Under the pieces are notes generated by a model. The model did no database searches. It worked only from the letters and a program-made list of their open reading frames with translations, and was not told where the DNA came from. From positions 186,001 through 250,000 of the forward strand of contig NW_020846723.1 of assembly GCF_003704095.1 (NCBI RefSeq): a stretch of DNA of 64,000 nucleotides, in the 5' to 3' direction. The translations under genes and the position numbers were made by a program. Position 1 is the first letter of the stretch; each line of letters begins with the position of its first letter. Positions 15,601 to 40,413 of the stretch are shown here, piece after piece. The stretch is from Pocillopora damicornis (Eukaryota).

Positions 15601-16086
15601 TGAAAAAATTGTTATTTTAATTAAATTTTTAGTTAGCAAACAACAAAAACTTTCATTACAGCAAATCTATAAAACAGAATTAAAACGCAAATGGAAGATG
15701 AAGCATAGAATATATAACTATTGAATCATACCTCCGCTTCATTGAAATTTATAAGTATAAAATGTCAGTTATAAAATTATGTCACCTACAATTTTGTTTC
15801 GTAAAATAATCAAATAAACTGACACTCAGGTGAAACGGATGTAATAAAAATGAATATAGAATGAATTCGGCGCTAAGGCGCAGGCATATTTCGCTTAATG
15901 TACACTATATAAGGGTTGTTAATTATCTTACGTCTTAATTTGATTTACCAAAGACATCGTGAGAATTTATGAGTTTTATTTTCTGTGAAAGAAAATCTTA
16001 AACAACGTGCTTGTTGTCAGTGAGCAGAGTCGACTAGAATTTTTAGCACAAAACGTTCCTCCCAGACCAACTGTAGGCTGACCGTC

Positions 16087-16995
16087 ATGATCAGTGATCT
16101 ATACCGAGGTTGTCAAGGACTTTCACAAATGAAAAAGCAGTCATTTCGGTTTCTGGAAGCCGTGAACATTTTTCTGGCAATTACTGCTACTTTAGCCAAT
16201 GTTTTCATCCTGGTGGCTTTTCATAAGGACTCATCCCTTCATCCACCTTCCAAGAGTTTGCTGCGTTTCTTGGCGATCACTGATTTGTTTGTCGGGATTC
16301 TCGCAGAGCCTTTTTATGTCGCGTTATTGTTTCTAACAGAGTACGGCGGTGTTAGTCTATGTGCAAAGATTTTTGGCATCGCCAGCAGGTTAGCGGGAAT
16401 TTTAGGTTTATTATCTTTATTTACCGTAAGTGCAATAAGTGTGGACAGACTACTCGCTCTGCTGTTAGGCTTGAGGTACAGACAAGTGGTTACTTTTAAG
16501 CGAGTCCTAATAACTGTGGTTTGTTTTTAGACTTTCCTCACTACCGCATACGTGATTATCATGGGCACCTTTGCCCACCTTTTCTTTTACTTCATCACAA
16601 TAATTTCGCTATGCTTAGCGGTCGCAACTTGCTGTTACATCAAGATTTTTCAGACGCTTAATCGCCATCAAGTTCAAATACAAGAACGAAGTCACGGCCG
16701 AGGACACCCAAATCGCCATCCTCCTCTGAACATTGCACGATACAGGAAGACAGTGTCTAACGCAATCTGTGTACAGTTTTCAGTCCTTATCTGCTACATT
16801 CCCTTGTTAGTAGTTATAATCTGTATGGCAATTCAGGGCATTGTTCCACCTCTTCTTAAACCATGGGCATTTACAAGAACCTTCTTGTTTTTTAACTCCA
16901 CTCTTAAGCCAATTCTGTATTGTTGGAATATAAGAGAGGTAAGGAGAAAAACCATAGAGATTGTTAGACAGATATTATGTCGCTCTTCGCCTTAG
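16087..16995 (+). pseudogene. Class A GPCR with a single in-frame premature stop
   Basis: ORFs 16087..16530 and 16552..16995 share one frame. TAG at 16528-16530 replaces the TM4 Trp (VVCF*T vs VVCSWT/VLCLWT in paralogs). NPxxY is altered to KPILY. Confidence 0.85.
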
Positions 16996-17711
16996 AGTTA
17001 CGCTTCCTTCAATGTTGGTCTGTTTGTTTTTTATTCGTTGGATTGATTTGTGGTCACTCTTGGTAAATGAAAAGATTTTTATGAGTGTTACTTAGCCAAT
17101 ACCCCTGTTAACCTATTTATTGCACTTGACAAGATAAAAAAAACCGAGTGGTAGATTCTTGCATAGAGTCGTGAACTGTTGCTGAACAACTAATGCAGAG
17201 ATCTTAAGAGTAGACAACGTAACTTTTCTGCACGTTATGAATATTGGTTTGGGCTTCCGTCTCCTTTCTGTAGTCTGAAGCAGTGATTTCCAGTGCCATT
17301 TTTCAGGCAAGGAACAGTGTATTCAGTATGTGTTTAAGTTTACTGTAAACTTGGTTTCCATAACCAACACAATCTCGCTTGCAAACGTTCTAGTGGCTCA
17401 TTAAGGTGTTTTTATCATTAAAATGTTACCGAAGTAAAAGTACAGTTTGATGTGCAATATTTACAACTGATCTTGATAATGTAAATTGTATGACTTATCT
17501 ATAAACGTATTATAGACGACGAAGAATGTGAACTGAAACCTCAGCTGGCAGTTAGGGAGTAATGAGTTGTTGGCAGTATTTTTAACACTTCTTCAATTAT
17601 GTTTATTAGGAAACTGAGTAGATAACTAAATCGAAATCATGGCAAACATTTTAAAGAAAGTGCTGTGCCAAAGTCTGCGCCTTCATTATTTGTCCTTATG
17701 TTTCGTTTCTT

Positions 17712-20700
17712 TTACATCTCGTAGCCCAAATTGTCTAGCTCAAACAAGCGTTGCTGTTCTTGTTTGTGCCTTTCCTGTAGAGCTCGGAAGTTCTTTTCCC
17801 AGTTCTTGCGGAAAGCTTTAAGCTCATCTTCCATGGCTAACAGCTCTGCACTTTGAGCGGCCATGAGTCGCTCCGTGTGCTCGCCACAGTTTGACGAAGT
17901 ATTCCTCTGGTGACCGTTCACTTCCAGATTTGTCTTTACTGTCTTCTGGTCAGGTTTGGAGACGTCTTGTTTTGCTGACAAAAGAATAGGACAAGAATGG
18001 CTTTTGTATATTTTCGGCCAGGTTAAGTTGATGTGAAGTTCCTACAGAACTTGAACAACCGGTTAAAATTACCTATTTTATCCATCAAAATAAACTACAC
18101 AGTCGAATAATTATCGCAAAAATTTTTAAAGATGTTCATTTCCCAACAGCTACATGAAAAGCAGTGTCTGATAAATTTGTACGTTTTTATTAATAATTTT
18201 CTTTTATTTACGTGATTTTATTTAGAAAGCGTGGGATCGTCACGCGCGCAGACTTGATGTCCTAGTAGATAGATATCAAGGAACGGCTTTCAACTTTCTC
18301 TATAAAGTGAACTTGTAGATTCAATGCTCGGTCTGTAGACATCTTTATGTTAAGGAAAAAAGGAAAGTTCTTGGCCAAAACTATATAAAGAAATATATGT
18401 AGACAACTCCCGTATGTATATGCGGGAAATTGCTGACGCTAAATGCGATTCCAAACAAACATTTTTGTTTTCCTACTCTCTCTGCAATGGTCAATTTGTG
18501 TGAATTGAATAAAAAGCTCGTTCTTTGTCGGCTCGAAATGTTTACGTTGGCGCAGATTCTTAACCCATGTTAGATGACTACGAAACAAAATAAACCAGTC
18601 TATTAAAAGTTGGAAGAAATTTGAAATCTTGAAGTAAAGATTGACAACAAATATTTAACTGCAGTAGTTTACCTTTCCGATTTTGAATTTCTTGCGCCTT
18701 CTTTTCCCGCGGGTAATACTGCCAGAAAAGACCAACAGCTAAGGCGAGCAAGAACAACCCAAACATGCCATAAACTGCGTACCCAAACAGGTTACCATCA
18801 AAGTAGTCTGCACCAGAGCTTGAATTGTCACCGCCATACTGAAAAAAGAGGAGGGATAAAAATACTACGGCTCAGCCGAACGCATTTTTTTCGAATTGGG
18901 AGAATTTTGCTTGAAAGGTATTCACGATAATTGCAGCTTGTTTTCCCAGGCTATAGAGAACGTTAACGATCTTTGATCAAATAATTGTAACACATTCCTT
19001 TTCTTATTATTGTTTTGCTTAAAGAGGCTCAATGTAGTTTCTTTTCGTGATCAGTAGAACAACAGATTTTCATCAATTGCCTTAATAATGGTATAAATGA
19101 ATTAAGATCTTTCCCCAACGCAAAAAAGCGAAGTTACTGCAGACACTGTGTATCCTAAGAAAAATACCCCATATTTTTGTCTTTATGCACCTGTTACCCA
19201 AAAACGAAATTCTAAGACGTCCATTAGTTATTGTTGAGTGTAGTTGCATACAGCATATCAGAACCAGGCACATCTTACTGCATGCAAAATTTTAAACATC
19301 TAATCGGTTTAATCGTGAATATACACGTACCATTATTATTTATTTATGTTCCCCATTAGGCGCTCGACCTATCTAACGCAAACCTCTGCTGATTGTCTCT
19401 TTAAAAAAAGTACTCCACAGAATTGAATAACAATACCTGTTTTGTTTTGCTGAACTTTTCCAAAATCTCGTGTATTTCCAACTGATGGTTCCCTTGGTAA
19501 CTCAGGAAACACGATCTTAGGGCCGCGTTAGTCTTGGGTAACACTGCTCCGTAAATGACAGGCTCACCCAGGACTGTGGCCACATATAACTTGTATGTAT
19601 TGTAATATTCACTGTGCTGAGTAGTGCTGAAAATATCTACTAAAGCTAACACGGTCTCCTCGCTCTTGACGCTCTTGTACAACTCGTCGTAACTTGTTTT
19701 GACTAAAACGAAAAAGAAAGTTTATTACTGATGAAAATGCTCTAAGCATAGGACAAATGATGCTCCTACAATACATAAAAGTATCCTTAATTGGATCGAT
19801 CGTTCGTTCACTTCCATCATCTAGGCAATTGTTTTGAGTGTTATTACCATGCATCACAATTTCAACGCATGTTTTCGGTTTTATTTTATAAGTATTCTCT
19901 AAAACCCGATTGATTTTAAACACCGCTATTAAGAGATATCAATCAAATTTTACTGTTTAATGCCCTTTGATATTACATTCCAGTATCCAAAAACCCGCCT
20001 ATGGACGCCGCCATTTTTGGAAACAGCTTAGTATCCTAGCCACACTCGCAAAACCACAACGCACGGTTCACAAACAACTGCTGTTCTGATCGGAACAAAA
20101 AAACCTTATTTGACCAAGAATCCCCTTCACGTAGCTTCTTACATTACTCAAGCCACTGCATAGAAGTAGAAAAAGGAGTAACGAAACTTTGGTACGTCAC
20201 AGATGACAGGCCAGATTGCTAGGTAGGATTCAAAACAGTGACACCGAATTTACCAAAATTTGAAGACAACTTTCGAACAATTAGGTTAAGCCTATTGTTT
20301 TCAGCTCAATAAAAGATCAGCCCCCAGATATCTCTTGTTGTCACTGTGTTCATTTATACTTCATTCGCTTTTCAGAACTGAAAACGTTAAAACTGCACAG
20401 CGTACGCAATGGTCAAACAACGTGACAACCAATCACTCTTAAAATTGTAGCAGAGGAAGATTCGGGTACAGCAGCTGTGCATCGATCGAGATTGCAAAAC
20501 ATGTAAATCTAAAGAAATCTGAACTTACCGTGCACCTCAGCATTTTGTAAAATAGCTAACTGTTCCTCAGCAGAGCCATTCAAAACCGCCACCTGAGAAA
20601 CCATTGAAATACTCATCAGGATTTGCAAAGTTGAAACTGATTCTCCTACGCCTTTCTTCTCTGCTTGTTTGCCTCTTTTTTTTCCTCGCAGTAGCTATTC

Positions 20701-23087
20701 ACGGTCACAATGAAACAACTGTAGTTTTATTCCATTCTGGAAGTGCTCTTTCGCTCAAGAAGTTGCAGCCTTTTCGGACCTCAATTCGCATAAAACGCTC
20801 ATTCAAGCATTCTAGTAACCATGAACTGATTGACCAATTAGTACTTCCCATTAATATGTTCAGTCAGTGAGTGAAATCAAAAACAGAAGATCACTCTTTC
20901 AACCCCTTAACTCTCAGAAGTAATTAAAACGTAAGTTCTCCCAATATCATCTAAACATTATCCAGCAAACGAGTAATGAGAATACGCAAACTGATCAGGT
21001 TGAAATTGCTATATTGATTTAACAGAAATTCTCATGACTAATTAACAATGAAATGTGCAGAAGCTAGAGGGGAGAATCAACAATCAGATCTTGGGAGTTT
21101 AAGAGTTAACACCTGTCATGCGACCCTGTCTAAAGCTATTATTTGACACCATCATGTGTAACTTTCAAGTGCTAACAAGTTATCCGTAATGACGTTGGTG
21201 GGAGAAAGAAAAAAGTCGGAACACCTACTTACTGGCATTCCATATAGGTTGTTAACTTGTTCAAGACTGTTACTGCTGAGAGATGCTGTTATTATTCCCA
21301 TAAAGATAGCGAGGATAACAAGACCAACATTAATCCATACCACACCAAAGAGGCGGCCTGCAATACTACGAGGAACTTTATCACCGTAACTAGAAAAGGA
21401 AGAGCAAAAGAAATGAAATGAGAGTAAACTTCATGTACAAATGTACGTATGAAGGAGATTATCGCCAAGTCATTATCTTAAGATAGTTACCTGTACTTTG
21501 AGGCTTAAAACCAAACTAAATAATGGGGCTAATTTTTATAATGTTAAATAAACCATCAGCTAGTTGTTATTCTGTTACAATTTGCTCGGCATGTATGCCT
21601 AAGAAACTTAGTCAAATATGACTATGAATCCAATGAAAACAGGGGCCTCTTTAACGCTACGTTGTATTAAATTGATAGTCGTGTATCCACTCGACCGAAG
21701 ACGCTAACGAAGAAATCTCCGTTTACAGAAGAACCTTTTCAGATGGGTCACCCTAAGAACATAGGGAACTGGCTGTTGTACATTGGTGATCATAACGAGG
21801 AGATACAATGTGCGTTGGCAATCAGTGGCAAGTGGTGGGTTCGAACGTCCTGCCAAAAACAGAGTAAGATCACTTTCAAATAAAATGCCCTTGCGTTAGC
21901 ACAAACAAGTTTTTGTCTCGTCACAAATACTTTTGGTGTTCATCTCTATCTACCTCAGCAAATTGTAACTTCATAATTTTTTATTCTTTGTCTTCCCTAG
22001 CATAATCTTGCAAGCTACGTACCCAACTGTTGTCATGGTGACAGCAGCCCACCAGACTCCTTCGAATACGCCTATTGGGAAAAACTTTGGGAATTCCTCA
22101 GAGTTTTTACGATTGTCCTGGAGGATACATAATGTGTGACCAACATTAAAACATACTTGAGTTTATATAGCACAGTAAAGTTATAGTCATTAGTAAATGA
22201 ACTGAGAGACGACTCATTATAGATTCATAATTCAATTCCAAGGGCTTACGAATTACAGAACTTGATAGTTCGCGAGCAGATCCTGTTTAAATACCTTATG
22301 GCAGCTAAGCAGCACTTTCCTACGGTTACAAACTTCACGTGACCAAAATATATATAAAAATAATTTTGCCACAGCAAGCTGAACAGCTGAGGTGGACTCT
22401 ATTTTGTAGATTCGTAAAGATTCGAGATAATCTGTATGATCAACAAAAAGCTACTTAGTTCTACTCAAAACTAGCTTTACTCTTAAGAATCTTATCGAAA
22501 TGTCCATGTTGCTGTGTAACATAATTTGCCCTTGATGTAAAACTAATTGAGCCAATTAAGACCAATTCTCTTACCAGAGCCCACATGACAATTCCACTGA
22601 GAGATAACGACATCCCAATGAAAATCACAATTGGCCAAGAATCCAAAATGGCGGCTAGAAGTTCTTCGCCTGGAATACTCCTCTGTACCACAATAGCCAT
22701 TCCAGGCGAATGAACTGAGCCTACAAAAGGACGTAGAAATATCGATTTCTCGAGGCCGACTCTCCGTCCCACAGGAATAATGATCTCTTCTGAGTACTGA
22801 TCGATCGTAGTTTTCAGTGATTTGGGATACTCGATAAGCTTGGCCGAAATATTGGGACTCTTGTGGCAACAAGCCTTGAAAACGATGCGAAGGATTTCTG
22901 GTATAGCACCAGAGATTTCACCTCTTTCCTTGTCCTCGAAAACGTAAGGCTTTTGTTCCCAGTAAACAAGATCCAATGATGTTTTTCCTGTAGAACATTC
23001 ATTTTGCATGTTAGATGTTGCCAAACCTATTCTTAATAAAGAGAAAACTGAGAGTATGGAAGTCAAACGATCAGAAAAACTCATCAT
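17712..23087 (-). CDS. GluR0/iGluR-like putative ligand-gated K+ channel, paralog A (7 exons, ~507 aa)
   Basis: Exons 23087-22575, 22117-22023, 21389-21233, 20592-20529, 19702-19437, 18838-18673, 17974-17712; all GT-AG, 1524 nt in frame. Signal-like N-terminus; S1 (YWEQKPYVF..ISGAIPEIL..PGMAIVVQR); M1; FEGVWWAAVTMTTVG|YGDKVPRS; M3; S2 (VAVLNGSAEE..ALVD..YGAVL); M4; coiled-coil tail. An alternative upstream ATG lies at 23147. Confidence 0.88.
20901..21110. mobile_element. Short non-autonomous element (piggyBac-like MITE family); similar copies at ~29170-29365, ~40425-40610, ~42598-42780
   Basis: Begins aaccccttaactc.. and ends ..cagatcttgggagtttaagagttaa. The copies share an internal layout (ttctcc..aat..atc; atgagaata; gat.ttggg.gt.aa.g.gttaa). 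Confidence 0.5.
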
Positions 23088-24318
23088 GTTAACAGTTATC
23101 AAAACGATATAGTTGGAGTAAACGCCAATACTTGAAAATGTGAACATGAATTACTCTTCACAGCTGTTTTTCGTTTAAAACAATAACAAATCCTTCATTT
23201 AACATATCAATAGATATTATCTTTGTTTTAACCATACATTCCCGTATTTTCGTAGTGTTTTAAAGGATAACAATATTTGCAACAATTTCAAACAATTTTA
23301 ATTTCACCTTCACCTCTCGAGAAGAATTGGAACTGATCATTTCAAATGATCATTTCATCACTTGATTTAGTACAAGCCTTTGATTTCCTATTTTTAAGTG
23401 GGTTTTTTTGTGGGATTTTAAACAATAGTTTCTCTCCATCAACATATGTAGACGTCGACTTGATTAGAGGAAATTGTGGTTTTGTCTTTCAACAAAGTAT
23501 ACAATAGGCTGAGCTTAATTACACACTTAACAGCTTTTTTTTCCATATTTTTATTTCTTATTGAATATGTTGTCAAATCAAATCAATTACACACGCCGCA
23601 GTCTGTAATGATATTCATTGCTAAGAAGGGCTTTAGATACACTGATTAGGTTATGTTATCAATACCAAAAGACTTCCCCAACAACAACTTTTAAAACAAA
23701 AAAATATATAGGTTTATATTTGATATAAATATGAATCACACTGCATCTACTTTCGTTGTCAAAGGGGGAAAAGATACTACAACTTAAAGATACCATGCTG
23801 AAATTTTGCATAGCTTAAAATATGTCTCCGTTAGTGTTAAACGTATCGGTATGCTAGATTTTTCTTTTCCTCGCTATGATAACCAGCTATGAAAAATTCA
23901 TGATGAAGCAGACTATTATCCAATGGAGAAAGTGATACTTTCACCACAATTTCTTGATGTATAGGACTGTAAGTGAATACAAATCACTCGCCAAAAATAC
24001 ACTGTAACTCTACTGGAAAATGCGATCCAACAGTAGGATGGTAGATAGATCTTCTTTTCTTGTCTACAAAACTGCGAAGAAATCAAAAGAACAGGTTTTA
24101 GTGCCATGATATCCCATTGAACTTACTCCGACACAGTAATTACCGTACGTGTCATTATTGTACAAGTGACAACAGAGACAGGAAAATATCAAGAGAAAAT
24201 AGAGGACATTTTCAGACATAATCGGACTCGTTGGTACCGCTCATTCCAATTGAATTTTTCCCTTCACGCCTATTGTGAAATAATAATCGAAAGACGTGTT
24301 TATTGAGTTCGCAACGCC

Positions 24319-27300
24319 ATGATCAGAGAGAGAAAAATGATGAAACATATTGCAGTGATGTTCTTGTTTATAGACAACGTCTTCTTAGCGAACGCTGTCA
24401 CCGTCGACCACAAGTGCAGCACAGGAGGGCGGCTGACTGTGTTATGGTGGGGCCAGGAGCCGTATATTTACAAATTTGGGGACAAGCAGGAAGATAACTT
24501 AAAATCAAAAGTAGATGCACCGGCGTCTATATCAGGGATGTTTCCATTAATCTTGGACCAAGCCCTTGAACGTTGTTGTAAAAGCAGCACAACACTGAAC
24601 TACACGCAGGTCCCTGAAGGTCCTGCTGGCTTAGATCAACTTCTGGCCGCCGAAGACTTTGATCTCATTTTACCCGTGGGGGCAGAGGTTGGAGCAGGAA
24701 CTGTTCGTCAGTTCTCGTTCACTGGGTTGCTTGAGTCCCCTGGAGTTGCAGTGCTTATCAAGGGAAACGTGTCTGGGGCTCAGTTATTGCTGTCTGTTCT
24801 TCAAGGCTGGCCCATCCTTGTGTTCATTCTCATTTCTGCCTCGCTCGCCGGAGTGGTTATCTGGTTATTTGTAAGTAACAATATGTCCTACTGCTTTGAT
24901 TGATAAGCCGAATAATTCGTGCAAAACTGACATGGCGGTAGAAAACGTCGCCGTTGCCTTTTAAAGATCATGGTTTAGTGTAGACACTTAAAAAAATGGG
25001 CGGGTGGAAAGTGACTGGAATCAAGCTGCCTTTTTTTCGATGATCCATTAAGCGTGGGCCCAGCACGGCGCACTAACACTACCCATATCATGGGGTTGTC
25101 CGGATCATCGATTTTTTTCGGTCATTGGCTCTGGTCCAAAATTTTGATTTTTCACTTAGAATCAAATCAAAACTCAGTTGTTTAAGGTCATCTAAGCAGG
25201 GCTCGATGTTTCGTTATTATTTCGCCTCAGATATCGATTCTCTTCTTGTTTACTGGACGAGGTGGTTTTTCACTGACAATCCACGTACAACTCAAGCAAA
25301 CGAACATTTTTGTCTAAACGTTAAATTGAAGAAGACATATTTAGTTTCATCGTTATGAATAAAAAGTTTGACCACATTTTCCTTTCTCAGGAACGGAAGG
25401 AGAATACAGAGCAATTTCCCGAGTCATTTTCCCATGGTGTGTTTGAAGGATTCTGGTGGGCTTTCATAACTATGACAACTGTTGGGTAAGTACTCGTGCG
25501 AACAGAATAGATAATCCTCGTCCAAATCAACCAGGTGCACTTAAAATAACGGGAAAAACGGGATTAATATTGTTAGCAATTGAAAAGCTAAGAACCTTTG
25601 TTTTGTTAGTTGTTACACTACGCAGTTAAATCGTGAGAAGGCGATTTTTTTTAATCTGCGAACCGTTCTTTCGCTGAAACACCATCATGTAGTTTCCTTG
25701 CGTTTGAAGGCCGTTTATAGTTGCAAGCTCAATTACAACGAATTGATGACCTGCGCTAAAGTTTGGAGAACACGAAATATATTTTGACTAAACCAAAAAA
25801 CAGTTTTATTGCGAATCCATTGTGCTTTGCATATCTGCATTTGCATTGCTCTCAAAGAAAGGCTCACTCAAGAAAAGGCTAACTTTAACTAATCGCGACT
25901 CCATATACATGTTTTACAAAAAGTTCTAGAACATTCCAGAGATCTGTAATACAACTATTTTTAGTAACATTACATTGCTATTACATAATAAGAAATTATG
26001 CTGACTAAGGGTTCTAGGAAGTTCCATTAAGAGTTGTCAATGAGTCAGCATGACTAAGCGTTCTAGAAACTTCTTCAATTCTATATTTAGTAATTCCGTA
26101 ACACAACGCACTCTCCATAACAGAAGCCCAAACATGTATACCACATCATCCATGCCTAAAACATAAGATTACTTGATAAAACTATGGCTTGACACGAGAG
26201 GAAAAGCTACTTGAGTAAAGTTAGTTAGGAGCCAAATTTCTTTTAGCGTTTGATGGCCATTTATAGTTACACGCTCATCTACAAGTAAGTCAGCCGTCAA
26301 CAAATCTCGTAACCCTCATGCTGGCGTAAGTGAGACCTAAGATTGGGAGTAAGTTGTATTGTTAAGATGCAAGGAGCTACATTCTGAGTGAACCGAGTGA
26401 TACCGCCCTCAGCTGAGCAAATTTAAGACTCTTGCCGCTCAGCAGACGAAATGCATACAGTTGAAGTACTGCTATGTCATGATGATAAAATGGCTGAGGT
26501 ATTGTGCGAGTCTTGTGCCATTACTGCAAAAAAGTACTTTCTATCTCCTTAGACCTTATACCTCTTGTGCATCTCAACCACAAAACACAACAAATCAGAA
26601 ATCACCAAGGAACGTAACAAGATTTTAGAGGGTGGATGAAGAGATGAGCTCTTGCTTAAGGGAATAAGTATTAATATATTACTTGATGTTGAAGTTATGA
26701 AGAGGAAAATATTGGCAGCTACAAGAAACTATAATGAAAATGTTCCTGCTTGAAACGTTTGACAAAAGAACAGAGCATCTTCAATGTTATCCGTCATTTT
26801 AGTTGTCATTGCTCAAATTTTACTAACGAGTGATCTTCAAGTGTTATAAGGACCAGTCAGGGTGAAGGTTCCTAACGGATTCGTCTCTGCCAGGTGATGA
26901 AGATGAAAGCAAAGTTCTTTCCTGTCAGCACATTTTAAGTTCGTGGGCGTCGAGTCATTGAATATATATGTATGAAATAAATTGATAACCTTTATTATTG
27001 TTTTCTGTCATCTCTAAGATGCATGCTGGAGGCTATTACAAGAAAGAATAACATCTAAAGAAAGTAAAATTGTAATAGTTTTTGTACAAATATTGATTTT
27101 CTTTTGCCTTTATACATATTCTTCCTATGTCCTCAGTATTTCATTAAAACGATTCGAAATTTCATTCAAAACAATAAAGTGAGCTTCGCTCACTTGTTCG
27201 TTTTTTGTTGATGCATTGCAACTCGTGAATAAAAATCGTTCGTCCGCTCTTTCCATGGAATAATCTCTATTTATTTAAGCAATAGACCATACTTCCTATC

Positions 27301-33300: not shown

Positions 33301-36300
33301 ATTACTTCAAAATGATTCAGAGACTGGTATTATCATTTTGCAACCTCCACGGTTTTTTATTTAAACGTGACAAAAACGTAGGCAACTTTTTGCTCAGAAG
33401 TTCATGACAAACTAATGACCAACCTGGAACTTTCAGGGTCAGTTCTGTTATTGATACTAAGTTCAAATGTAAAAATTGTCCAGTACACTGCCGGATGCTA
33501 ACTGATCACCGAATAACATTCAACTGTACATCAAATAAATTGTATAGTAGCGGTAGGAAGGTGTTCAAGAAACTGCCTAATGTCGGGCAAATCGGTATAG
33601 AAAGCACCATTAAGTTTGAAACAACACCCAACGGATTCCAAGACGGACAGTACCACGATAAAAAGGTCTGTAGCCAGGCTTTGGAAAAGTTAGTTTGCTG
33701 GCTGATTTTGTGGTGAGTCAAGGTATCAAGAATAGTGAAGTTTTTAGAATGAAGCAGCAACGGTTGATACGTTGAGTATCAAGCAGAATGTTAATTGATA
33801 TTTTTTTGAAAAGAGGGGAGACCACGTCATGAAAATTGGATTATTCACTACACAATGCATCGAAAAACGAGACCGCAAGAATGTACAAGTCGATTAAGAT
33901 AAGTTGGGAGAAAATACCATTTATGAAGTTTTTATGCCTTGTAGTAATTAGTGAAGTTAGACTAATGAAACTAATCTATCCCTAATTGACTTTCATGGCA
34001 GATTTCAGTCGTTAATCACAGCGAGGAACACAAGCTTGGAATTCGAGAAATTGCGAATGTTGAAGGTAAACAACAGTGTTAATTATCTGATTTGGGCTTT
34101 GAAACATCTCTGTATTTCTCTATTATCATTTTTAAATTCTTTTGCATAACTCATATCTTGAAAAACCTCCTGTAATTTGCCCTTCAGTTTTCAAGGAGAC
34201 GGTTGTAAAAGGTCACGAAACTAAAATCGTGCGTGTTAAGAACAAAATAATTAATGGTAAATTTTTTTCGTAAGAACGATCGCTGTCTAATCGAGGGATA
34301 CAACATTAATTTTAACAAACATTCAAAATAATTTGCATTATTATTATTATATTATTAAGTTCACGTATTTTTATTCAAAATTTTTTCCGCATTTACGGTT
34401 CACTCGTCGAAGACTGCAGTTCAGGCAGTCGAAAGCTCGTACTTTCTTAACGTGATCGTTCTGGCCAGAGATCGTTCTTAAAAAAATACCATGTTTTACC
34501 CTGGCTGCGGCTCTTTTATATTTTCAAAATAATTAGTGTTAACAGATACTAGCTGCCTTCAATCGATTCCTTCCTTCTCTTTTATATTTCTGTTAGAAAT
34601 GCTTTGATGATGCACAACTTAGTTTTGACATCCGCAACAGTTAAGGAGCATGTGCGTGTGTTATTCTGATTCGTTCATAAGTTTACCTATAACTTAGTTT
34701 CTTTTCGTTTTTGATTCAGTTTTTTATTTTGTTTGGAACCTTTGTCATGAAACTAACACGTATGGGTTAGAGGACGGAAATAATCAGTTGAAACAATAAA
34801 GCGACGAAAATTACCTCATTAAACTTCGTTAATTTTTTTCTCCGCCAAAGAACTCTGAATATTAGAACTATCTGCTGATGACATTTCCAGGTGATGTGAT
34901 TAGGATCTTTAAAATAATCAGATTCAGAGACCGAAACGCTGGCTAAGCGACACCATTTCCAATTTCAAACAATGACCCGAAACAAATGAAAATTACATCA
35001 TTGTTCTTAAAAGATCAATTAAGATAACGAACTCGAAAAATAATGCGCACAGACGATTTTTTTAAAGTTTCTCATCTATTCATGTTTTGCATAGGTCTTA
35101 GGCTCTTTCTATCTCAGTTTATTTCTGTCTCTTTTCCTTCCACTCTATAGGACCGAAAAAAATCGCGTTATTGTTATGGTGACTGTTTGTTACGTTAGTT
35201 CAAAGTATAAAAAAAGAAAAAGTACAAAGGAACAGGATGAACGAAATCAAAATAAATCTTTGAACCAGATTTGCGCAAAGCTGTTGTTACGTTGTTGGTA
35301 TCCTTCCTTTCTAAGTGAACAGGAAGGAAAAAGGTGTTTCAACTGTTCGGGTTCAACCAATCATTCATGTTTGCTGTTGGGCATTGTTTCAGAAATGATG
35401 AAAAAAACAAGCAGTGCATCGAACGAGACATCGTCTGGGAACCTAAAACATAGATTGGCGTGCCGTTTGTACCGAAATAATGATCTTGTTTGCGATCATC
35501 TATGGTTTAAATGCAATAGTGGCGTTTGTAGGAAATCTCTTCGTCTTACTTGTGGTAGCAATCTACAACCGTTTTCACAAAAAAAGATACATTTTGTTGG
35601 CCAGCTTAGCACTTTCAGATTTGCTCTTTGCCATACTGGTGGTCAGCAATCGCGCCGCCGCCAATGCTCTTGAGCAATGGCCTTTTGGAACCACTTGGTG
35701 CCTTGGAAACGCGTTTATTGTCAGACTTCTTCACTTAACTACGGTATTCCATCTTTGTGCGATATCTCATGAAAGATACACTGCCATCGTCAGGCAGCCA
35801 TTAACCTACATTGACAACTTCACCAAGATGAGAATGTTTCTCTATCTAACTTTTTTATGGTTTTTACCGGCGGCTATATCCCAAGGTCCGTTCATCGGCT
35901 GGGGAGACTTTACTTACAACCCAGGAATATTCACTTGCGAGCAGCATTGGGAAACAACTTTTCCTTTGCTGATATCTTCTTTTCTCATTCCACTGATCTT
36001 AATAAGCTTCCTAAACTACAAGGTTCTCAAAGTCGTCTGTCGGATTCAAAGCAGTTGCAAAGTTGTAAGTGGCCTATCCAGCATAGAAAACAAGACGGCA
36101 GATTGGTTGACCGGGCAGCAATCATGCTCCAGTAATAACCAATCTCAGAATCCCAATCAACAGCACACAAGGAAATGCAAGAGTCCAGGTGATACCAAGG
36201 GCGAAGAACATGGGCCTTTGTCTCAAATACAGAATGCGACTGTGAAGAGCTTTCTCCCTTCTCAAATGCAAGATGAAGAAAATGACCTATATTGACCTTA

Positions 36301-39300
36301 TCCTGCAGAAACAACTCTTTTGCAAGCACACCAGGTAGGAGAAGTACTTACAGCCCAATACCGATCCAATGATGGTTCCCCGCACCGATTCCATGGAGTC
36401 CGATCGCACACGTCACCAAAACATTTACATAGTCTAGTAGATGTGCCAAAAAATCAGTCCTTTTTCAATGGCCAGAGCAACAATTGCAATGAAGCAGTAG
36501 AAATTGGATGCTCTAATGCGAAGATATCTCAGATGCACCATCAACAAACCCATCGTCATGCCGTGGCAGAACGCGAACACGACAAATTAGATGAAATAAC
36601 TATCGAGATGGTCTTTGCTCAAAAAGGCCAGTCGTCACGACAACCTCAGAATTTTGGCACTCTACAAGATAACGATGGATTACAGATAGGTGGTATGAAG
36701 AGTCAGAGTCTCAGAAAGGAAAGAAAAACTGGGAGACGAACTGTTTACAAAATCACAACTAAAAATGCTGTTGGCGTAGCAACTAACGTCAATCGATCCC
36801 AAAGAGAAAGACCATCTTTAGGAGAGCACAAAATCAAAATTCCAAGCCAGAAAAAAGAGGTTTACCCCGAATGTGATTTTGAAGCAGTCAGTCACCCAGT
36901 CACTAAAGCAAAGGCATTACCTGTGCATCTACGTGAAGAAGATTGCCTAACACCGCACATCAATCGAGGAACATTCCAAGATGAGCAAGCAAAGGAACGA
37001 GAAATGCCAATGAATGGCAGTCCTTCAAATTGCCACACTTTACAAGCGCCGGCAAAAAATTGGGCAACCAAACAAAGAGAAAAGCCAGGAAAAACTGTGA
37101 TGTTACTTGCTAAGCTGCTTGGAGAGGGAAAAGCCGCCTGAGATGTCATGATTATAATTGGAGCTTTTATTTTATGTTACCTTCCCCTATGGATCATGGC
37201 TTTGTACCGTTCCCTTGGTGGGTGGACTGCAGCGAAGACCACTCTATCAATCCATTACATATATTCCTTCAGCATGCTTTGTAATCCTATAATCTATTCT
37301 GTGAGAAAAAAAGGGTTTAGGAAAGCTCTGAAAAAGATGTTAAGACTGTGAAATTTATTTTCTTCGAAGGCTTAGTTGTAGCTAAGAAGACTATGCGTAT
37401 TTTTACTCTCTCAATACAGTAGTATAGTTTCAAACGACTCAAAATTGATGTAAGCGCCGTTATGAACGAAATGTTTTAAAAAAACAGCTAAGTCTACAGT
37501 ATCCCAGCAGTCTCGATAACAATTCGCACAATATGCAAGTTATATAATTATTTTATTGGTAAGGACGTGGTGTAGATCCGAGTGTTGTCCAAAGCATGAC
37601 ATTAGTTAATTTTTGCATGTTAATGACTAGTCAAGCAAATGGCGTAACACTGAAGTTTAATGAAAAATTGATACTGTTATTACTGTAGAAGAAGAAAGCA
37701 AACTGTATTGTGGCTTCAGTTGGCCGAGAGGGACGTAATCAGCACTAAAATTGTTTAGAAGTTCGGCCTGATTCATGTAAACACGTGTTGTTGATAGATA
37801 AGTAACTGAAGAGTAGAAATCTGAATACAGAAAATGAAATGCGTTATTTATGGCTTAAACAATGAGTGTTCTATGACTCTATTGCACCTATTCGTCAGTT
37901 AACATTTCGACATCATCTGGACTTAAAATTTCATCTTAGTGAAAGTCATGTGGTATTTGATTACAGACTTAATAGTTGACACACGAAGATGACCTAGTTA
38001 ACTCTTTAGACCCTAACATCCCTGACATAGGTATTCATTCTCTCCACACTGTTCTGTAACATTTCTTAAGGTACTAAATAATCAAACATATGATACAAAA
38101 AAATACACGGATAGTGGGAGGTTGACTTTCGCGGTTTGTTTACATCAAAAGTCACGTGACACTACACGTGAACTCAAAAGCCTAAAAGGTGAATTGTAAC
38201 TGCATTGTGACTTTGTTACTTATGCAGCTCTGAGTAACAGCGACCAAGTGTTTCAATATGTGCTGGACCGTCGAGTGGAAGGTGCATTGGTGGACGTACA
38301 CGGACTCAAGCATCACATAAATGCCCTCACTCAACACAATATTCAGGTAAATCAGTAGTTAATACGAATTCTCTGTCTGTTGTCTCTTGTCTGCTGTCTT
38401 GTCTTTCGTTATTTCCATCCTGTAAAGTAGGATAATTAACAATCCCAGTAGCCATCGTGAAAACGGTGAGGATTCGGTGGTTCAAATCTGTGTCGTTTTA
38501 AGTTAACACCAACTCTGATTCCTCAATCCTACCATAATTTGAGGTCCATTTCCTCGAAAAAAATTTAGGGAAATGCCAAATTTTTGCTCGATTAAAGTTT
38601 GATTTTTTTTTTTACATCATTGGTTAACGTGGCAACGCTACAGTCTCTTAAAATTAGCGCATTTAATTTTCAGCCTTATGCGTTCTTTAACTCACACGAA
38701 AAAGAGTTTGCTAACCCCCCACTTCGTTATTGAATTCCGATCTTTCTACAAAATTTTTAATACATCTGCGTAGAGGTTTAGAGACACCCCTGAAATTTGA
38801 GTTGATTTTAGGCAATTCGTTTTCTTGTTTCGCTGCAAAATTGCAAGATAGTTCCTCCCAAAAATAAGGCAGGCTTATTCTGCCGTGATCGAACCAAAAC
38901 TTTTACATATGATCACTGTCCTACAGGTTGGAAACATTCTAACGAGTCACGTTTCATATGGAGCGATCCTTGCACGCAACTCGACAGATTTTTTGAAATG
39001 CTTCAATGAATACGTTCAAACGGAAGAGCAATGGCTTTACAACATTCTGGCCGAAAATACCGGAACCACACAGGTAGGTTTGACAAAGGAAGCGGCAACT
39101 ATATTTTAAACAAAAGAGATTATTACATGGCAAGGAAGTCTTGAGGTAAATCCATACGTCCTTATTGGTTCCTACTTGGTCGGGATTTCGGCACATGGAT
39201 CGATTCCAAGGAAACGGCTACAAGCCGTGAAATTTTGTACTCGAAAGTCAGCAAATTCCACACAAATAGGTTTGGTCTAGGTACCATTTAATAAACTACT

Positions 39301-40413
39301 CACTAACCTCGCTTATTAAAACCGTACCGGGGAATGTTGGCTCTCGCTTGTTTTTGTACAGACCTCGCCGTGCTCAGTCTGTATACTGCCACGACCTCAG
39401 GCCAATATTCCCTAGTAGAGCTCTCGCGCTAGGCTACAGCCCTTACGCTAAAACTTATTATTTCAATGAAAAGAGTACTGCACGCCTTTGGGTAGTGTAA
39501 TAAACCTTGGTGACAGTACTGGCAACTAATGAGGTACTTTTCTTGTTCAAAAGGAAAAGATAAGCGTTGCAGAAGATTACTTTGGAAGCGGAGGAATATT
39601 CAGCATAACAGTATATGGTGGGCTGGCCTTGTTTGTGGTGCTCATGGCTGCAGGGATTGGCTGGGAGGCATACAAGAAAAACAAAATGAAAAACAGCGGG
39701 AAAAGCGGAGGTAAGGAAAATCTCGTTCTGTTGTCTCTTCTGGCCCGATCCAGCTTAACTACTTTGAACGACACAAGGGAGAATTTATATAAATATTGAG
39801 CAGCAAATTAACAAATCGACAGTAGTTCAGCGTGATCTGTTGTCTTATCGACAACACTATTCTTCTACACAGTAGTCAAATTGCTGTGCGCCTCGTGAGT
39901 CCGTTACAAATTTGTCTTTGTCGATGAAAGGACAGACCACGCTTAACCACAGTCGATTTGTTTTTTACCACAATATCGACGTCAAACTAAAAGATCCTTT
40001 CAATGCGTGACCATTGCGTGAGACGCTGACGCGAGCAGATTTCTCTGTACTCTCATCGACAACGCCAAATTGGCCAATTAGAATGCGACATCACTGCCAA
40101 TTGTGGTAAAAATATTAAAACATATTCTTTCTCTCTACCATCAGCAAGCTCCATCACAGCACCCACAGCCATTGTACTGGAGGACATAGGGACCCACCCG
40201 ACCCCAAGGCTGTCATTTGGTCATGCACCTTCTGAGCAACTTGTCTCCAAACACAGCATGGAAATCATGAAGATGGACGAAGAGCTAAATAATTTCCGCC
40301 GGGACTGGCAGGAAAAACGTACGAAAATGCTTGAGCGACATCAGAGAGAACGAGCTGTTTCTGGCATGAATGGTGACACTAACAGTTCCCTAACACCTCT
40401 TAAAGGGAATTGA
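24319..40413 (+). CDS. GluR0/iGluR-like putative ligand-gated K+ channel, paralog B (8 exons, ~519 aa)
   Basis: Exons 24319-24870, 25391-25485, 31842-31998, 34002-34065, 38228-38346, 38927-39073, 39554-39710, 40145-40413; all GT-AG, 1560 nt in frame. LWWGQEPYIY..ISGMFPLIL..PGVAVLIKG; M1; FEGFWWAFITMTTVG|YGDLAPKT; M3; ISVVNHSEE..GALVD..YGAIL; M4; coiled-coil tail. Exon sizes 95/157/64 match paralog A. Confidence 0.88.
25923..26075. promoter_or_regulatory. Cluster of heat-shock-element and ARE/AP-1-like motifs (possibly an LTR remnant)
   Basis: TTCtaGAAcaTTC at 25924-25936 and TTCtaGAAacTTC at 26061-26073. TGAGTCAGCA at 26041-26050, TGACtaaGC at 26051-26059, TGCTGACTAA at 25999-26008. Confidence 0.35.
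26585..27126 (-). pseudogene. Inverted partial duplicate of the 28245 GPCR (upstream region plus first ~75 codons)
   Basis: The reverse complement closely matches ~27928-28470. ATG at 26809 reads MTTKMTDNIEDALFFCQTFQAGTFSL*, with TGG>TAG at codon 27. Confidence 0.9.
28245..29153 (+). CDS. Intronless class A 7TM GPCR nested in intron 2 of channel paralog B
   Basis: 302-aa ORF with SSLHPPSKILLRSL, AISVDRLFALSLGVRYRQIVT, PLNIARYRKTVSS, VCYLP and NSTLNPVLYCWKI. Confidence 0.93.
   Translation: MTTKMADNIEDALFFCQTFLTGTFSFWFLVAANIFLFITSTSSNILILIALHKSSSLHPPSKILLRSLAIADLCVGFVLEPVFVAYLMSVHYGNWKVCFPLVHLSAVVEMLSCVVSLLTMTAISVDRLFALSLGVRYRQIVTSKRVALAVLCLWTASICASASVYWTFDIIGYYSVTAFTLGLTVSTCCYAKIYQKLLHHQVQLQGSVPGRAAPLNIARYRKTVSSALWVYFTLVVCYLPAGIVTGLVVIHPGETRAPNLLLAWVMTFTLSFLNSTLNPVLYCWKITELRTTVKATVRQMYR
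30565..30790 (+). mobile_element. Penelope-like element 3' end / pLTR with minimal hammerhead-like motif
   Basis: ggtatcaacgagcgcttt (GINERF) tail followed by gctCTGACGAagggctaacgctcGAAAagtcagc. It is an inverted homolog of ~32480-32690. Confidence 0.75.
31255..31345 (-). mobile_element. Degenerate pLTR of a second Penelope-like family
   Basis: Minus strand reads actCTGATGAtgactgccgctcaggttattaaagcgtcagtcac..aacagtccttttcaggactactctcac, a decayed hammerhead-type core. Confidence 0.45.
32440..33165 (-). mobile_element. Penelope-like retroelement fragment with GIY-YIG endonuclease
   Basis: Minus-strand pieces GTFKCARSRCKTCSFIHNVEKIS, YCITYTYCKKLYIGETGRR and FQIGTLNPHGINERFSFN*, then a pLTR with ggctCTGACGAgagggtttacgctcGAAGcgtcagc. 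Confidence 0.85.
33220..33440 (+). mobile_element. Penelope-like RT-endonuclease linker fragment, inverted relative to 32440-33165
   Basis: DRIPFTLKFHPHNHAVKCIILKNFRLLQND..FKRDKNVGNFLLRSS*QTNDQPGTF; its distal half is homologous to the reverse complement of ~33065-33165. Confidence 0.7.
35395..37351 (+). pseudogene. Intronless class A GPCR (amine-receptor/GPR161-like, very long IL3), disrupted; nested in intron 4 of channel paralog B
   Basis: ORFs 35480..36295, 36320..37141 and 37148..37351 are one frame broken by TGA at 36293 and 37139. Motifs GN, LALSDL, WPFGTTWC, ISHERY, GW..C, KAA*DVMIIIGAFILCYLP, NPIIY. A probable 1-nt frameshift near 35444 cuts off the N-terminus MMKKTSSASNETSSGNL. Confidence 0.85.

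What the first reader, a model, noticed from the sequence alone, without database searches (positions are those of the whole stretch)
17712..40413. Pair of animal GluR0-like channels: periplasmic-binding-protein clamshell fused to an intact K+ selectivity filter, plus an M4 helix
Seen: two spliced genes (~507 and ~519 aa) with the order signal peptide - S1 - M1 - pore helix + TMTTVGYGD - M3 - S2 - M4 - cytoplasmic tail. Known: splitting a binding-protein clamshell around an inverted pore is the iGluR topology. Animal AMPA/kainate/NMDA receptors have an amino-terminal domain, the SYTANLAAF gate and no GYG filter. Cyanobacterial GluR0 has the GYG filter but no ATD and no M4, and rotifer AvGluR1 has a K+-type filter with an ATD and M4. 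These proteins have GYG and M4 but no ATD and no SYTANLAAF (M3 ends IFMGIITASLS / MFISIITAALT), a combination between GluR0 and eukaryotic iGluRs. Inference: extracellular-ligand-gated, K+-selective and therefore hyperpolarising receptors. I do not recognise this as a characterised animal family, although homologs may sit in databases as uncharacterised proteins.
Basis: partly seen in the sequence, partly recalled or inferred. Interest (0 to 1): 0.92.

Follow-up and report, generated by a model that had tools for sequence, protein, structure and literature searches.

The report
Animal GluR0-like potassium channel gene pair
Two neighbouring, expressed coral genes encode channels that join a bacterial-type ligand-binding clamshell to an intact potassium-channel pore plus an extra membrane helix; they belong to a large animal family I found no paper describing, which may be ligand-gated inhibitory receptors and a link in glutamate-receptor evolution.

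Summary
The window comes from a Pocillopora coral genome. It holds two divergently transcribed paralogs, 34% identical: gene A (minus strand, 7 coding exons, 507 aa) and gene B (plus strand, 8 coding exons, 519 aa). All six gene A introns are joined in RNA contigs from four studies. Three spliced transcript contigs and an annotated 519-aa protein confirm gene B.

Both genes encode signal peptide, S1, M1, pore helix with TMTTVGYGD, M3, S2, M4 and a helical cytoplasmic tail, with no amino-terminal domain. An AlphaFold model (pLDDT 84.8) matches GluR0 ligand-binding cores (Z 21, rmsd 2.6 Å). As a whole it matches AMPA/NMDA LBD-TMD chains. A profile comparison with bacterial GluR0-type channels gives E 2e-47 across S1, pore and S2.

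The family has at least 30 loci in this genome. It occurs across Cnidaria and in a sponge, hemichordates and annelids. Databases call its members only "uncharacterized" or "potassium channel domain-containing". I found no paper describing it.

The head-to-head A/B pair is conserved in Nematostella. The carboxylate-binding Arg of amino-acid receptors is not conserved, so the ligand is unknown. Ligand gating, K+ selectivity and a hyperpolarising effect are well-motivated inferences that remain untested.

The parts
22575..23087 (-). Gene A coding exon 1: signal peptide, S1 lobe, M1. An alternative upstream ATG lies at 23147.
   Evidence: ORF and GT donor at 22574. RNA contigs cover 22574-23129 and join to exon 2. 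Homologous to S1+M1 of the family.
22023..22117 (-). Gene A exon 2: cytoplasmic M1-P linker, pore helix and TMTTVG (ends after 2 nt of the Gly codon).
   Evidence: RNA joints 22116/7->22574/5 and 21389->22023. 77% identical to the Nematostella ortholog's exon.
21233..21389 (-). Gene A exon 3: completes the Gly codon, then YGD, M3 and the start of S2.
   Evidence: Pfam Ion_trans_2 30.1 bits, E 4.4e-7. RNA joints.
20529..20592 (-). Gene A exon 4: first S2 strand/helix (VAVLNGSAEE...).
   Evidence: RNA joints 19702->20529 and 20590/2->21231/3. Aligns to the family NGSEE motif.
19437..19702 (-). Gene A exon 5: main part of S2, including the conserved Asp (LVD) and the S2 cysteine.
   Evidence: RNA joints. 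Homology.
18673..18838 (-). Gene A exon 6: S2-M4 linker and M4.
   Evidence: RNA joints. Hydrophobic segment followed by a basic stretch.
17712..17974 (-). Gene A exon 7: cytoplasmic tail with the conserved helix (ELLAMEDELKAFRKNW...) and the stop codon 17712-17714. The 3'UTR continues below 17650.
   Evidence: RNA joint 17974->18673. The tail is 52% identical to a hemichordate homolog's tail over 40 aa.
23130..23876 (.). Intergenic region between the 5'-most RNA evidence for gene A (23129) and for gene B (23877): candidate bidirectional promoter.
   Evidence: A similar spacing of about 1.1-1.3 kb between first coding exons is seen in the Nematostella orthologous pair. Promoter function was not tested.
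23877..24870 (+). Gene B exon 1: 5'UTR, then CDS from the ATG at 24319 (signal peptide, S1, M1).
   Evidence: Transcript contigs L001-L003. 100% identical to P0253 residues 1-184. HMMER finds 139 representative homologs.
25391..25485 (+). Gene B exon 2: M1-P linker, pore helix, TMTTVG (phase-2 end).
   Evidence: Ion_trans_2 partial match.
31842..31998 (+). Gene B exon 3: YGD, M3, start of S2.
   Evidence: Pfam Ion_trans_2 30.8 bits. Transcript contigs.
34002..34065 (+). Gene B exon 4: first S2 element (ISVVNHSEEHKL...).
   Evidence: Found by tblastn with P0009. GT/AG and transcript contigs.
38228..38346 (+). Gene B exon 5: S2, including the conserved Asp (ALVD).
   Evidence: Together with exon 6 it equals gene A exon 5 in length (119+147 = 266 nt).
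38927..39073 (+). Gene B exon 6: S2, including the conserved cysteine.
39554..39710 (+). Gene B exon 7: S2-M4 linker and M4, followed by KKNKMK.
   Evidence: AF2 helix 392-426.
40145..40413 (+). Gene B exon 8, coding part: cytoplasmic tail with a conserved helix, stop at 40411-40413. The 3'UTR runs on to at least 41193, probably 42343.
   Evidence: AF2 helix 459-505 with pLDDT up to 96.

Best explanation
Genes A and B encode subunits of a metazoan branch of the GluR0/iGluR superfamily.

Each subunit has:
- a cleaved signal peptide;
- an extracellular two-lobed binding-protein clamshell (S1+S2);
- an inverted K+-channel pore inserted between the lobes (M1, re-entrant pore helix with TMTTVGYGD, M3);
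- a third membrane helix (M4);
- a cytoplasmic tail with a conserved long helix.

Four subunits should form a pore whose selectivity filter faces the cytoplasm, as in GluR0. Closure of the clamshell around an extracellular ligand would pull on the M3 linkers and open the channel. K+ would flow out and the cell would be hyperpolarised or shunted.

The ligand is unknown. It is probably not a standard alpha-amino acid held the classical way, because the carboxylate-binding Arg/Thr of S1 are replaced, although the S2 Asp is kept. The divergent A/B pair is conserved from coral to sea anemone. It is probably co-regulated and may co-assemble.

Shown: gene structures, expression, family membership by sequence profile, predicted fold, and distribution. 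Inferred: topology (strongly), tetramer, ligand gating, K+ selectivity, physiological sign, heteromer.
For: - Splicing and expression: gene A, six joints in four RNA runs; gene B, three spliced contigs; annotated 519-aa protein.
- Pore: Ion_trans_2 on exon 3 of both genes and 47-60 bits on full-length homologs. A PDB profile search hits Kv, KvAP and KcsA pores at E 1e-16 to 1e-10. MTTVGYGD is found in 180 of 187 family proteins in which the pore pattern was found.
- Clamshell: AF2 model of P0253, pLDDT 84.8. VIA-align gives GluR0 LBD 1ii5 at Z 21.3, rmsd 2.6 Å, 213 of 221 residues, and 2pyy at Z 21.4. Foldseek's top hits are AMPA/NMDA LBD-TMD chains over 440-470 columns, E about 1e-13.
- Homology to bacterial GluR0-type channels across S1, pore and S2: hhalign probability 100%, E 2.2e-47, 295 columns; phmmer E 1e-24 to 1e-17.
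- Extracellular N-terminus: paralogs with N-terminal CUB+Ig, EGF or FN3/SEA modules; positions of cysteines, sequons and charges.
- M4: present in 148 of 151 animal members against 7 of 82 bacterial ones.
- Purifying selection: gene B orthologs are 69-77% (Oculina), about 58% (Acropora, Montipora) and 48% (Nematostella) identical.
- Pair conservation.
Against: - No electrophysiology exists for any member that I could find.
- Pfam's ligand-binding models (SBP_bac_3, Lig_chan-Glu_bd) do not hit any S1/S2 exon or full-length member.
- The S1 Thr and Arg, each kept in 30 of 36 bacterial relatives, are replaced in animals. Position 127 reads E, V or T, and Gly in gene B. The cleft may therefore bind something unusual or nothing.
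- A K+ signature does not guarantee high selectivity.
- The model is a monomer.
- M4 and the tail show no detectable sequence similarity to iGluR M4 or to any known domain.
Confidence: 0.7

Rival explanations
1. The clamshell is no longer a small-molecule sensor. The proteins would then be leak channels, K+ channels gated some other way (voltage, lipid, protein partner), or modulatory subunits. S1/S2 would serve assembly, adhesion or binding of a protein or matrix partner, as proposed for some orphan iGluR-family members.
For: The carboxylate-binding Arg/Thr are lost. No Pfam ligand-binding model matches. Several paralogs add adhesion-type modules (CUB, Ig, EGF, FN3) in front of S1. The review read describes bacterial GluR0s as passively open.
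Against: The cleft fold is predicted with high confidence (pLDDT above 90 through most of S1/S2). The S2 Asp that binds the ligand amino group in relatives is kept in 110 of 114 animal members. The PPY/PPF and GI motifs are nearly invariant. S1/S2 exons are as conserved among orthologs as the rest of the protein. Variation of pocket residues among many paralogs fits diversified ligands better than a dead pocket.
Confidence: 0.15
2. The channels are ligand-gated but poorly selective among cations despite the signature, so they would be depolarising. The K+ motif would then be a retained ancestral feature without strict selectivity.
For: Known GYG-bearing channels such as HCN are only weakly K+-selective (established knowledge). 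AvGluR1 combines the signature with a eukaryotic iGluR body. From my memory, unverified, its selectivity is not strict.
Against: The whole P-loop, not just GYG, is that of highly selective channels. It has WW in the pore helix, then TMTTVGYGD, nearly identical to the Shaker/Kv and KvAP P-loops aligned. It is almost invariant over the family from cnidarians to hemichordates, and a sponge member has TSVGFGD. GluR0, with the same motif in the same inverted orientation, is K+-selective.
Confidence: 0.08
3. These are conventional-orientation 2TM K+ channels. The flanking domains would be cytoplasmic regulators and the last helix would carry the tail outside the cell.
For: The best sequence matches of the pore are ordinary K+ channels.
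Against: There is an N-terminal signal peptide. All four conserved cysteines and five of the six N-glycosylation sequons lie in S1/S2. Paralogs have extracellular-type N-terminal modules. Basic residues follow M1 and M4. The flanking domains are homologous, residue by residue, to the extracellular S1/S2 of GluR0-type channels.
Confidence: 0.03
4. The signal is an artefact: bacterial contamination, pseudogenes or mis-assembly.
For: The nearest non-animal relatives are bacterial.
Against: The genes have six and seven spliceosomal introns, confirmed by polyA RNA. Intron positions are shared by about 30 paralogs in the genome. Orthologs lie in chromosome-scale assemblies of many animals. Animal-type GPCR genes sit nested in the introns. 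The reading frames are intact.
Confidence: 0.02

Closest known systems
GluR0 (Synechocystis) and bacterial GluR0-type channels (SBP_bac_3 + Lig_chan + Ion_trans_2, about 350-370 aa)
   Same: The S1-pore-S2 order is the same. There is no amino-terminal domain. The K+ P-loop is the same (WW...TMTTVGYGD[K/R]AP) and M3 has a similar skeleton (FTA...LT). The LBD fold matches (Z 21 to 1ii5 and 2pyy). Profile homology spans 295 columns.
   Different: The animal proteins add M4 and a roughly 90-aa cytoplasmic tail with a conserved helix. They have a eukaryotic signal peptide, introns and four conserved ectodomain cysteines. They lack the conserved S1 Thr/Arg. Pfam's SBP_bac_3 and Lig_chan-Glu_bd models do not recognise them. 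Some paralogs carry CUB/Ig/EGF/FN3 modules.
Eukaryotic iGluRs (AMPA, kainate, NMDA, delta, epsilon, lambda)
   Same: The LBD-TMD architecture includes a third membrane helix after S2. Foldseek's top PDB hits for the whole model are AMPA/NMDA LBD-TMD chains. Pfam Lig_chan is just above its cut-off on M1-P-M3 (34.6 against 30.8 bits for gene B's product).
   Different: There is no amino-terminal domain and no SYTANLAAF gate. An intact K+ filter takes the place of the Q/R/N-site pore. There is no Lig_chan-Glu_bd match. The family is absent from the published metazoan iGluR classification, which never mentions GluR0, potassium or GYG.
AvGluR1 (rotifer Adineta vaga)
   Same: It is an animal member of the superfamily that keeps the TXVGYG signature, and it is regarded as an evolutionary intermediate.
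   Different: AvGluR1 has the full eukaryotic iGluR architecture including the ATD, and it is known from one rotifer gene. The family here has no ATD, has dozens of paralogs per cnidarian genome and is spread over at least four phyla.
Insect/protostome ionotropic receptors (IRs): resemblance in how the family evolves, not membership
   Same: Most members lack an ATD. Ligand-pocket residues diverge. There are large lineage-specific expansions in tandem arrays (at least 30 loci here, several clusters). A conserved pair could play a co-receptor-like role.
   Different: IRs derive from AKDF-type iGluRs and have non-selective cation pores. Here the pore is a K+ pore.

Membership tests
GluR0-type prokaryotic glutamate receptor channels | Type II binding-protein clamshell split into S1 and S2 by the channel insertion | tested here: met
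   AF2 model with VIA-align: Z 21.3-21.4 to GluR0 LBDs over model residues about 36-375, skipping the TM insert. hhalign E 2.2e-47.
GluR0-type prokaryotic glutamate receptor channels | K+ channel signature TXVGYG in the re-entrant loop | tested here: met
   TMTTVGYGD in both genes. Ion_trans_2 above its cut-off.
GluR0-type prokaryotic glutamate receptor channels | Only two transmembrane helices; no M4 and no C-terminal domain | tested here: not met
   Both genes have a third TM and a tail. A late TM is present in 148 of 151 animal members against 7 of 82 bacterial relatives.
GluR0-type prokaryotic glutamate receptor channels | Amino-acid-binding triad: S1 Thr and Arg for the alpha-carboxylate, S2 Asp for the alpha-amino group | tested here: not met
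   In the alignment, the bacterial Thr (30/36) and Arg (30/36) are replaced in animals (M/L/S and E/V/T; V and G in gene B). Only the Asp is kept, in 110 of 114. The S1 alignment is remote, so exact columns carry some uncertainty.
GluR0-type prokaryotic glutamate receptor channels | Glutamate-gated, K+-selective current | not testable with these tools
   Needs electrophysiology.
Eukaryotic ionotropic glutamate receptors (iGluR sensu stricto) | LIVBP-like amino-terminal domain | tested here: not met
   The LBD alignment starts at model residues 24-38, directly after the signal peptide. There is no ANF_receptor Pfam hit.
Eukaryotic ionotropic glutamate receptors (iGluR sensu stricto) | SYTANLAAF gate motif in M3 and a non-K+ pore loop (Q/R/N site) | tested here: not met
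   M3 reads IFMGIITASLS in gene A and MFISIITAALT in gene B. The pore loop is TVGYGD.
Eukaryotic ionotropic glutamate receptors (iGluR sensu stricto) | M4 helix after S2 and a cytoplasmic C-terminal domain | tested here: met
   AF2 helix 392-426 followed by a basic stretch. Homology of this helix to iGluR M4 is not shown.
Eukaryotic ionotropic glutamate receptors (iGluR sensu stricto) | Pfam Lig_chan (PF00060) and Lig_chan-Glu_bd (PF10613) matches | tested here: inconclusive
   Lig_chan scores 34.6 bits against a 30.8 cut-off for P0253, on M1-P-M3 only. Other members fall above or below the cut-off. PF10613 never matches.
Canonical 2TM/P K+ channels (KcsA/Kir-like orientation) | K+ pore domain (Ion_trans_2) with GYG filter | tested here: met
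Canonical 2TM/P K+ channels (KcsA/Kir-like orientation) | Cytoplasmic N- and C-termini with the P-loop entering from outside | tested here: not met
   By prediction only: signal peptide, ectodomain cysteines and sequons, extracellular modules fused N-terminally in paralogs, and homology of the flanks to extracellular S1/S2. Experimental topology was not tested.

The most novel reading that the evidence does not exclude
Animals possess an ancient, overlooked class of ionotropic receptors: K+ channels gated by extracellular ligands. It is present in sponges, cnidarians, hemichordates and annelids and is greatly expanded in cnidarians. Its architecture is GluR0 plus M4 plus a cytoplasmic tail, without an ATD. 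This would be the missing step between bacterial GluR0 and eukaryotic iGluRs, with M4 acquired before the ATD and before loss of K+ selectivity. The A/B pair, kept head-to-head since the coral-anemone ancestor, would form an obligate heteromer. With a diversified pocket, the family would serve as fast inhibitory or chemosensory receptors for non-amino-acid ligands.
Probability: 0.35. Interest if true: 0.93.

Novelty: new variant of a known kind. Interest (0 to 1): 0.82.

Why it matters
To my knowledge (not checked here), all known fast inhibitory ionotropic receptors of animals conduct chloride. A natural K+ channel opened directly by an extracellular ligand would be a new mode of fast inhibition or sensory transduction.

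The family also bears on a long-standing question: how K+-selective, two-helix bacterial GluR0 became the non-selective, ATD-bearing, three-helix iGluR. Reviews note that the order of the fusion events is unknown, and cite only GluR0 and the rotifer AvGluR1 as links. This family is an extant animal form with M4 and a C-terminal domain but still a K+ filter and no ATD. That makes the order of events testable by phylogeny and chimeras.

The family probably escaped notice for two reasons. Its Lig_chan scores fall near or below the thresholds used in iGluR surveys (E 1e-10 in the survey read). K+ channel surveys target the Kv, Kir and K2P families (my inference, not checked).

In practice, a compact, eukaryote-native ligand-gated K+ channel could be a scaffold for chemogenetic silencing. 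The Nematostella orthologous pair gives a genetically tractable system.

Tried and rejected
- **Pfam on single S1/S2 exons:** no family found.
- **phmmer of S1 and S2 exons against PDB:** only non-significant hits, the best a molybdate/tungstate-binding protein at E 0.5. The fold had to be shown by prediction on the full-length database protein.
- **M4 exon against PDB:** no iGluR match, so homology of M4 to iGluR M4 stays open.
- **Tail exons against Pfam and PDB:** nothing significant, only coiled-coil noise.
- **Rfam on 17000-41500:** nothing.
- **Complex prediction on the A and B tail helices:** No verdict on A/B or tail self-association.
- **The look-up of encoding contigs for P0253 and P0254:** blank, because records near the window's genome are withheld. 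The look-up succeeded through cluster member P0375.
- **Gene A's full-length annotated product:** could not be retrieved. The best database entry was only the exon-1 ORF, P0012.
- **Ten literature searches and several paper look-ups:** no description of the family. Janovjak 2011 and Lomash 2013 are not held, so what I say about AvGluR1's selectivity is from memory.
- **Readings considered and rejected:** bacterial contamination or HGT artefact; pseudogenes; conventional K+ channel orientation.
- **The RNA depth spike at 21016-21202:** not a small RNA. It is a dispersed repeat with over 1000 candidate copies.
- **Joined exon models:** Gene B was studied through P0253 and gene A exon by exon.

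Full report
**What is in the sequence**

The window is G000:C3358:186001-250000 of a 234-Mb coral assembly. Gene B's product is 97-100% identical, exon by exon, to Pocillopora damicornis XP_027053144.1 / RMX38411.1, 'uncharacterized protein LOC113680327', 519 aa (P0253). Between 17712 and 40413 lie two divergently oriented genes.

Gene A is on the minus strand and has seven coding exons:
- 23087-22575
- 22117-22023
- 21389-21233
- 20592-20529
- 19702-19437
- 18838-18673
- 17974-17715, with the stop at 17712-17714

Gene B is on the plus strand and has eight coding exons:
- 24319-24870
- 25391-25485
- 31842-31998
- 34002-34065
- 38228-38346
- 38927-39073
- 39554-39710
- 40145-40410, with the stop at 40411-40413

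All introns are GT..AG. Exon lengths correspond between the paralogs: 95, 157 and 64 nt, then 266 nt, which in gene B is split into 119+147. In both genes a phase-2 intron splits the Gly codon of TMTTVG|YGD. The two products are 34% identical.

**Expression and splicing**

I laid RNA contigs of four polyA/oligo-dT libraries, each from a different study, on 17650-23250. All six gene A joints appear in every run with CT..AC ends on the plus strand, which is GT..AG on the minus strand. The contigs reach 23129. They therefore cover the ATG at 23087 (507 aa) but not the upstream in-frame ATG at 23147 (527 aa).

For gene B, cluster members of P0253 include 519-aa ORFs on 2-4 kb Logan contigs. Three of these contigs, L001-L003 from three runs, align to the window as eight blocks at 98-100% identity with the introns removed. 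They also show a 5'UTR from at or before 23877 and a 3'UTR to at least 42343. That leaves at most about 750 bp between the 5' ends of the two transcripts.

Gene B was analysed through P0253 and gene A exon by exon.

**The pore**

Exon 3 of each gene alone passes Pfam Ion_trans_2, at 30.1 and 30.8 bits against a cut-off of 22.5. Full-length homologs score 47-60 bits. They also give a marginal Lig_chan match restricted to M1-P-M3. A profile of 14 animal members hits PDB K+ channels (LmK, KvAP, Kv1.2, Kv2.1, Shaker, KcsA) at E 1e-16 to 1e-10. The alignments run WWAxVTxTTVGYGD. MTTVGYGD occurs in 180 of the 187 family proteins in which the pore pattern was found. A calcareous sponge member has TSVGFGD.

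**The clamshell**

Single S1/S2 exons hit nothing in Pfam or PDB. HMMER with gene B exon 1 against 1.84 billion representatives found 139 homologs, among them 430-550-aa full-length proteins.

An AlphaFold2 model of P0253 on a 150-sequence alignment has mean pLDDT 84.8, and above 90 through most of S1, the TMD and S2. Foldseek's best PDB hits are AMPA and NMDA receptor LBD-TMD chains. They align over 440-470 columns at E about 1e-13, nearly the full length of the 400-residue chains.

VIA-align places S1+S2 (model residues about 36-375, skipping the membrane insert) on these structures:
- the GluR0 ligand-binding core of Synechocystis (1ii5): Z 21.3, rmsd 2.6 Å, 213 of 221 residues;
- the GluR0 ligand-binding core of Nostoc (2pyy): Z 21.4;
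- glutamine-binding proteins: Z up to 21.6.

An animal-only profile aligns to a profile of bacterial GluR0-type proteins (SBP_bac_3 + Lig_chan-Glu_bd + Lig_chan + Ion_trans_2) with probability 100%, E 2.2e-47, over 295 columns from the first S1 strand to late S2. The ESM Atlas structure search independently ranks cyanobacterial 'GIC family' channels directly after the protein's own cluster.

**Topology**

The LBD begins within about 10-15 residues of a typical signal peptide, so there is no amino-terminal domain. P0253 has four cysteines in all (C33, C86, C87, C354), and all lie in S1/S2. Gene A has the matching four, plus one more in its tail. Five of the six N-glycosylation sequons of P0253 lie in S1/S2 or the M3-S2 linker. 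Lys/Arg-rich stretches follow M1 and M4.

Paralogs in many cnidarians carry CUB+Ig, EGF repeats or SEA+FN3 modules N-terminal to S1. This is strong independent evidence that the N-terminus is extracellular. The pore is therefore inverted, as in GluR0 and iGluRs. A hydrophobic helix after S2 (M4) is found in 148 of 151 animal members but only 7 of 82 of the nearest bacterial relatives.

After M4 comes a tail of about 90 aa with a confidently predicted long helix (residues 459-505). It carries a conserved E..L..ME.E...F...W motif. Gene A's tail is 52% identical over 40 aa to that of the hemichordate Glandiceps. The tail matches no Pfam or PDB entry.

**The family**

A profile search returned 373 proteins. 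They come from Anthozoa (Nematostella, Actinia, Acropora, Montipora, Porites, Stylophora, Pocillopora, Oculina, Xenia, Dendronephthya, Paramuricea), Hydrozoa (Hydra, Hydractinia, Clytia) and Scyphozoa (Rhopilema). Members also occur in the sponge Sycon, the hemichordates Saccoglossus and Glandiceps, and the annelids Owenia and Dimorphilus.

Every source name is 'uncharacterized', 'hypothetical', 'Potassium channel domain-containing', or a wrong automatic 'Kv subfamily' label. In a FastTree, four named bilaterian sequences and one unnamed contig protein form one supported clade inside the animal family. No classical iGluRs could be included.

In the window's own genome the YGD-M3 exon is found at about 30 places, many in tandem clusters. 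The same exon boundary at the filter recurs throughout.

**The ligand pocket**

In the 150-sequence alignment, the S1 Thr and Arg are each conserved in 30 of 36 bacterial relatives. These are the residues that hold the amino-acid carboxylate in this protein class. In animals they are replaced by M/L/S and E/V/T, and by V and G in gene B. The S2 Asp is kept in 110 of 114 animal members, and the PPY and GI motifs are nearly invariant.

I read this as a retained cleft with changed and diversified ligand chemistry. I hold this loosely, because the S1 alignment is remote.

**The pair**

In Nematostella (DS469597.1, locus L004) the gene B ortholog P0009 has a divergent upstream neighbour of the same family. 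Exon-by-exon tblastn gives reciprocal best matches:
- Gene A exons match the upstream minus-strand gene best: E2 77%, E3 69%, E6 56%.
- Gene B exons match the plus-strand gene best: E2 81%, E3 60%, E7 63%.

About 1.1 kb separates the first coding exons in Nematostella. The head-to-head arrangement therefore predates the scleractinian-actiniarian split. It supports co-regulation.

**Comparison with what is known**

Reviews describe prokaryotic GluR0 as a two-TM, K+-selective channel lacking the NTD, M4 and CTD. They name AvGluR1, with full eukaryotic architecture plus the K+ signature, as the presumed intermediate. They also say the order of the fusion events is unknown.

The comprehensive metazoan iGluR phylogeny never mentions GluR0, potassium or GYG. 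A 2025 eukaryote-wide survey collected sequences with an iGluR HMM at E 1e-10, a threshold most of this family would miss. A cnidarian K+ channel survey does not mention glutamate-receptor-like channels.

I found no paper describing the family in the held library. Subscription literature could not be checked.

**Verdict**

These proteins work like GluR0 by every sequence and structural criterion I could test. They are not GluR0 sensu stricto, because they have M4, a tail and a changed pocket. They are not classical iGluRs, because they have no ATD, no SYTANLAAF and an intact K+ filter. I file them as a new variant within the GluR0/iGluR superfamily. Ligand gating, K+ selectivity, the hyperpolarising effect, the tetramer and the A/B heteromer are inferences awaiting electrophysiology.

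Noticed in passing
window 28245-29153 (+) and 35480-37351 (+): Two intronless rhodopsin-family GPCR genes (Pfam 7tm_1, E 1e-27 and 4e-30) are nested in introns 2 and 4 of gene B, on the same strand as the host gene. The second is interrupted by two in-frame stop codons (36293-36295 and 37139-37141) around a long third-loop region. It is either a pseudogene or has small introns there.
   Followed up: partly
window 953-1879 (-), 5253-6113 (+), 11754-12659 (+), about 16100-16900 (+): More intronless 7tm_1 GPCR ORFs lie upstream of gene A. The channel pair therefore sits inside a GPCR gene cluster.
   Followed up: partly
window 21045-21120 (intron 3 of gene A): A stretch of about 65 nt gave RNA word depths of 7,500-17,700 with unrelated flanks on both sides. 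It is a dispersed repeat with more than 1000 candidate copies in the genome at about 91% identity, not a small RNA. Rfam has no hit.
   Followed up: yes
L004:9845-10336 (Nematostella DS469597.1): The annotated Nematostella ortholog of gene B (P0009, 474 aa) starts inside S1. The homolog of gene B exon 1 begins about 150 nt upstream of the annotated gene start, so that old gene model is N-terminally truncated. The intron that splits gene B's exons 5 and 6 in Pocillopora is also absent in Nematostella.
   Followed up: partly
window 43030-43855 (via L001:3904-4073): One transcript contig of gene B continues past the 3'UTR into three short spliced blocks at 43030-43080, 43170-43220 and 43782-43855, across an N gap at 43451-43561. 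This may be read-through, a chimeric assembly, or overlap with the neighbouring gene.
   Followed up: no
window 44851-45339 (-): An ORF matching the USP7 C-terminal ubiquitin-like domain (USP7_C2, E 2e-26). It is probably an exon of a deubiquitinase gene downstream of gene B.
   Followed up: no
G000 contigs C2502:468-499 kb, C2688:49-76 kb, C1935:670-725 kb: These are tandem clusters of three to five or more paralogs of the same channel family elsewhere in the coral genome. Several matches contain stop codons and may be pseudogenes or intron read-through.
   Followed up: no
P0194, P0203, P0205, P0068 (CUB+Ig); P0186, P0050 (EGF); P0222, P0234 (SEA/FN3): These family paralogs in corals, anemones, Hydra and jellyfish replace the missing ATD with other extracellular modules in front of S1. 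A 181-member FN3-bearing cluster exists in the ESM Atlas.
   Followed up: partly
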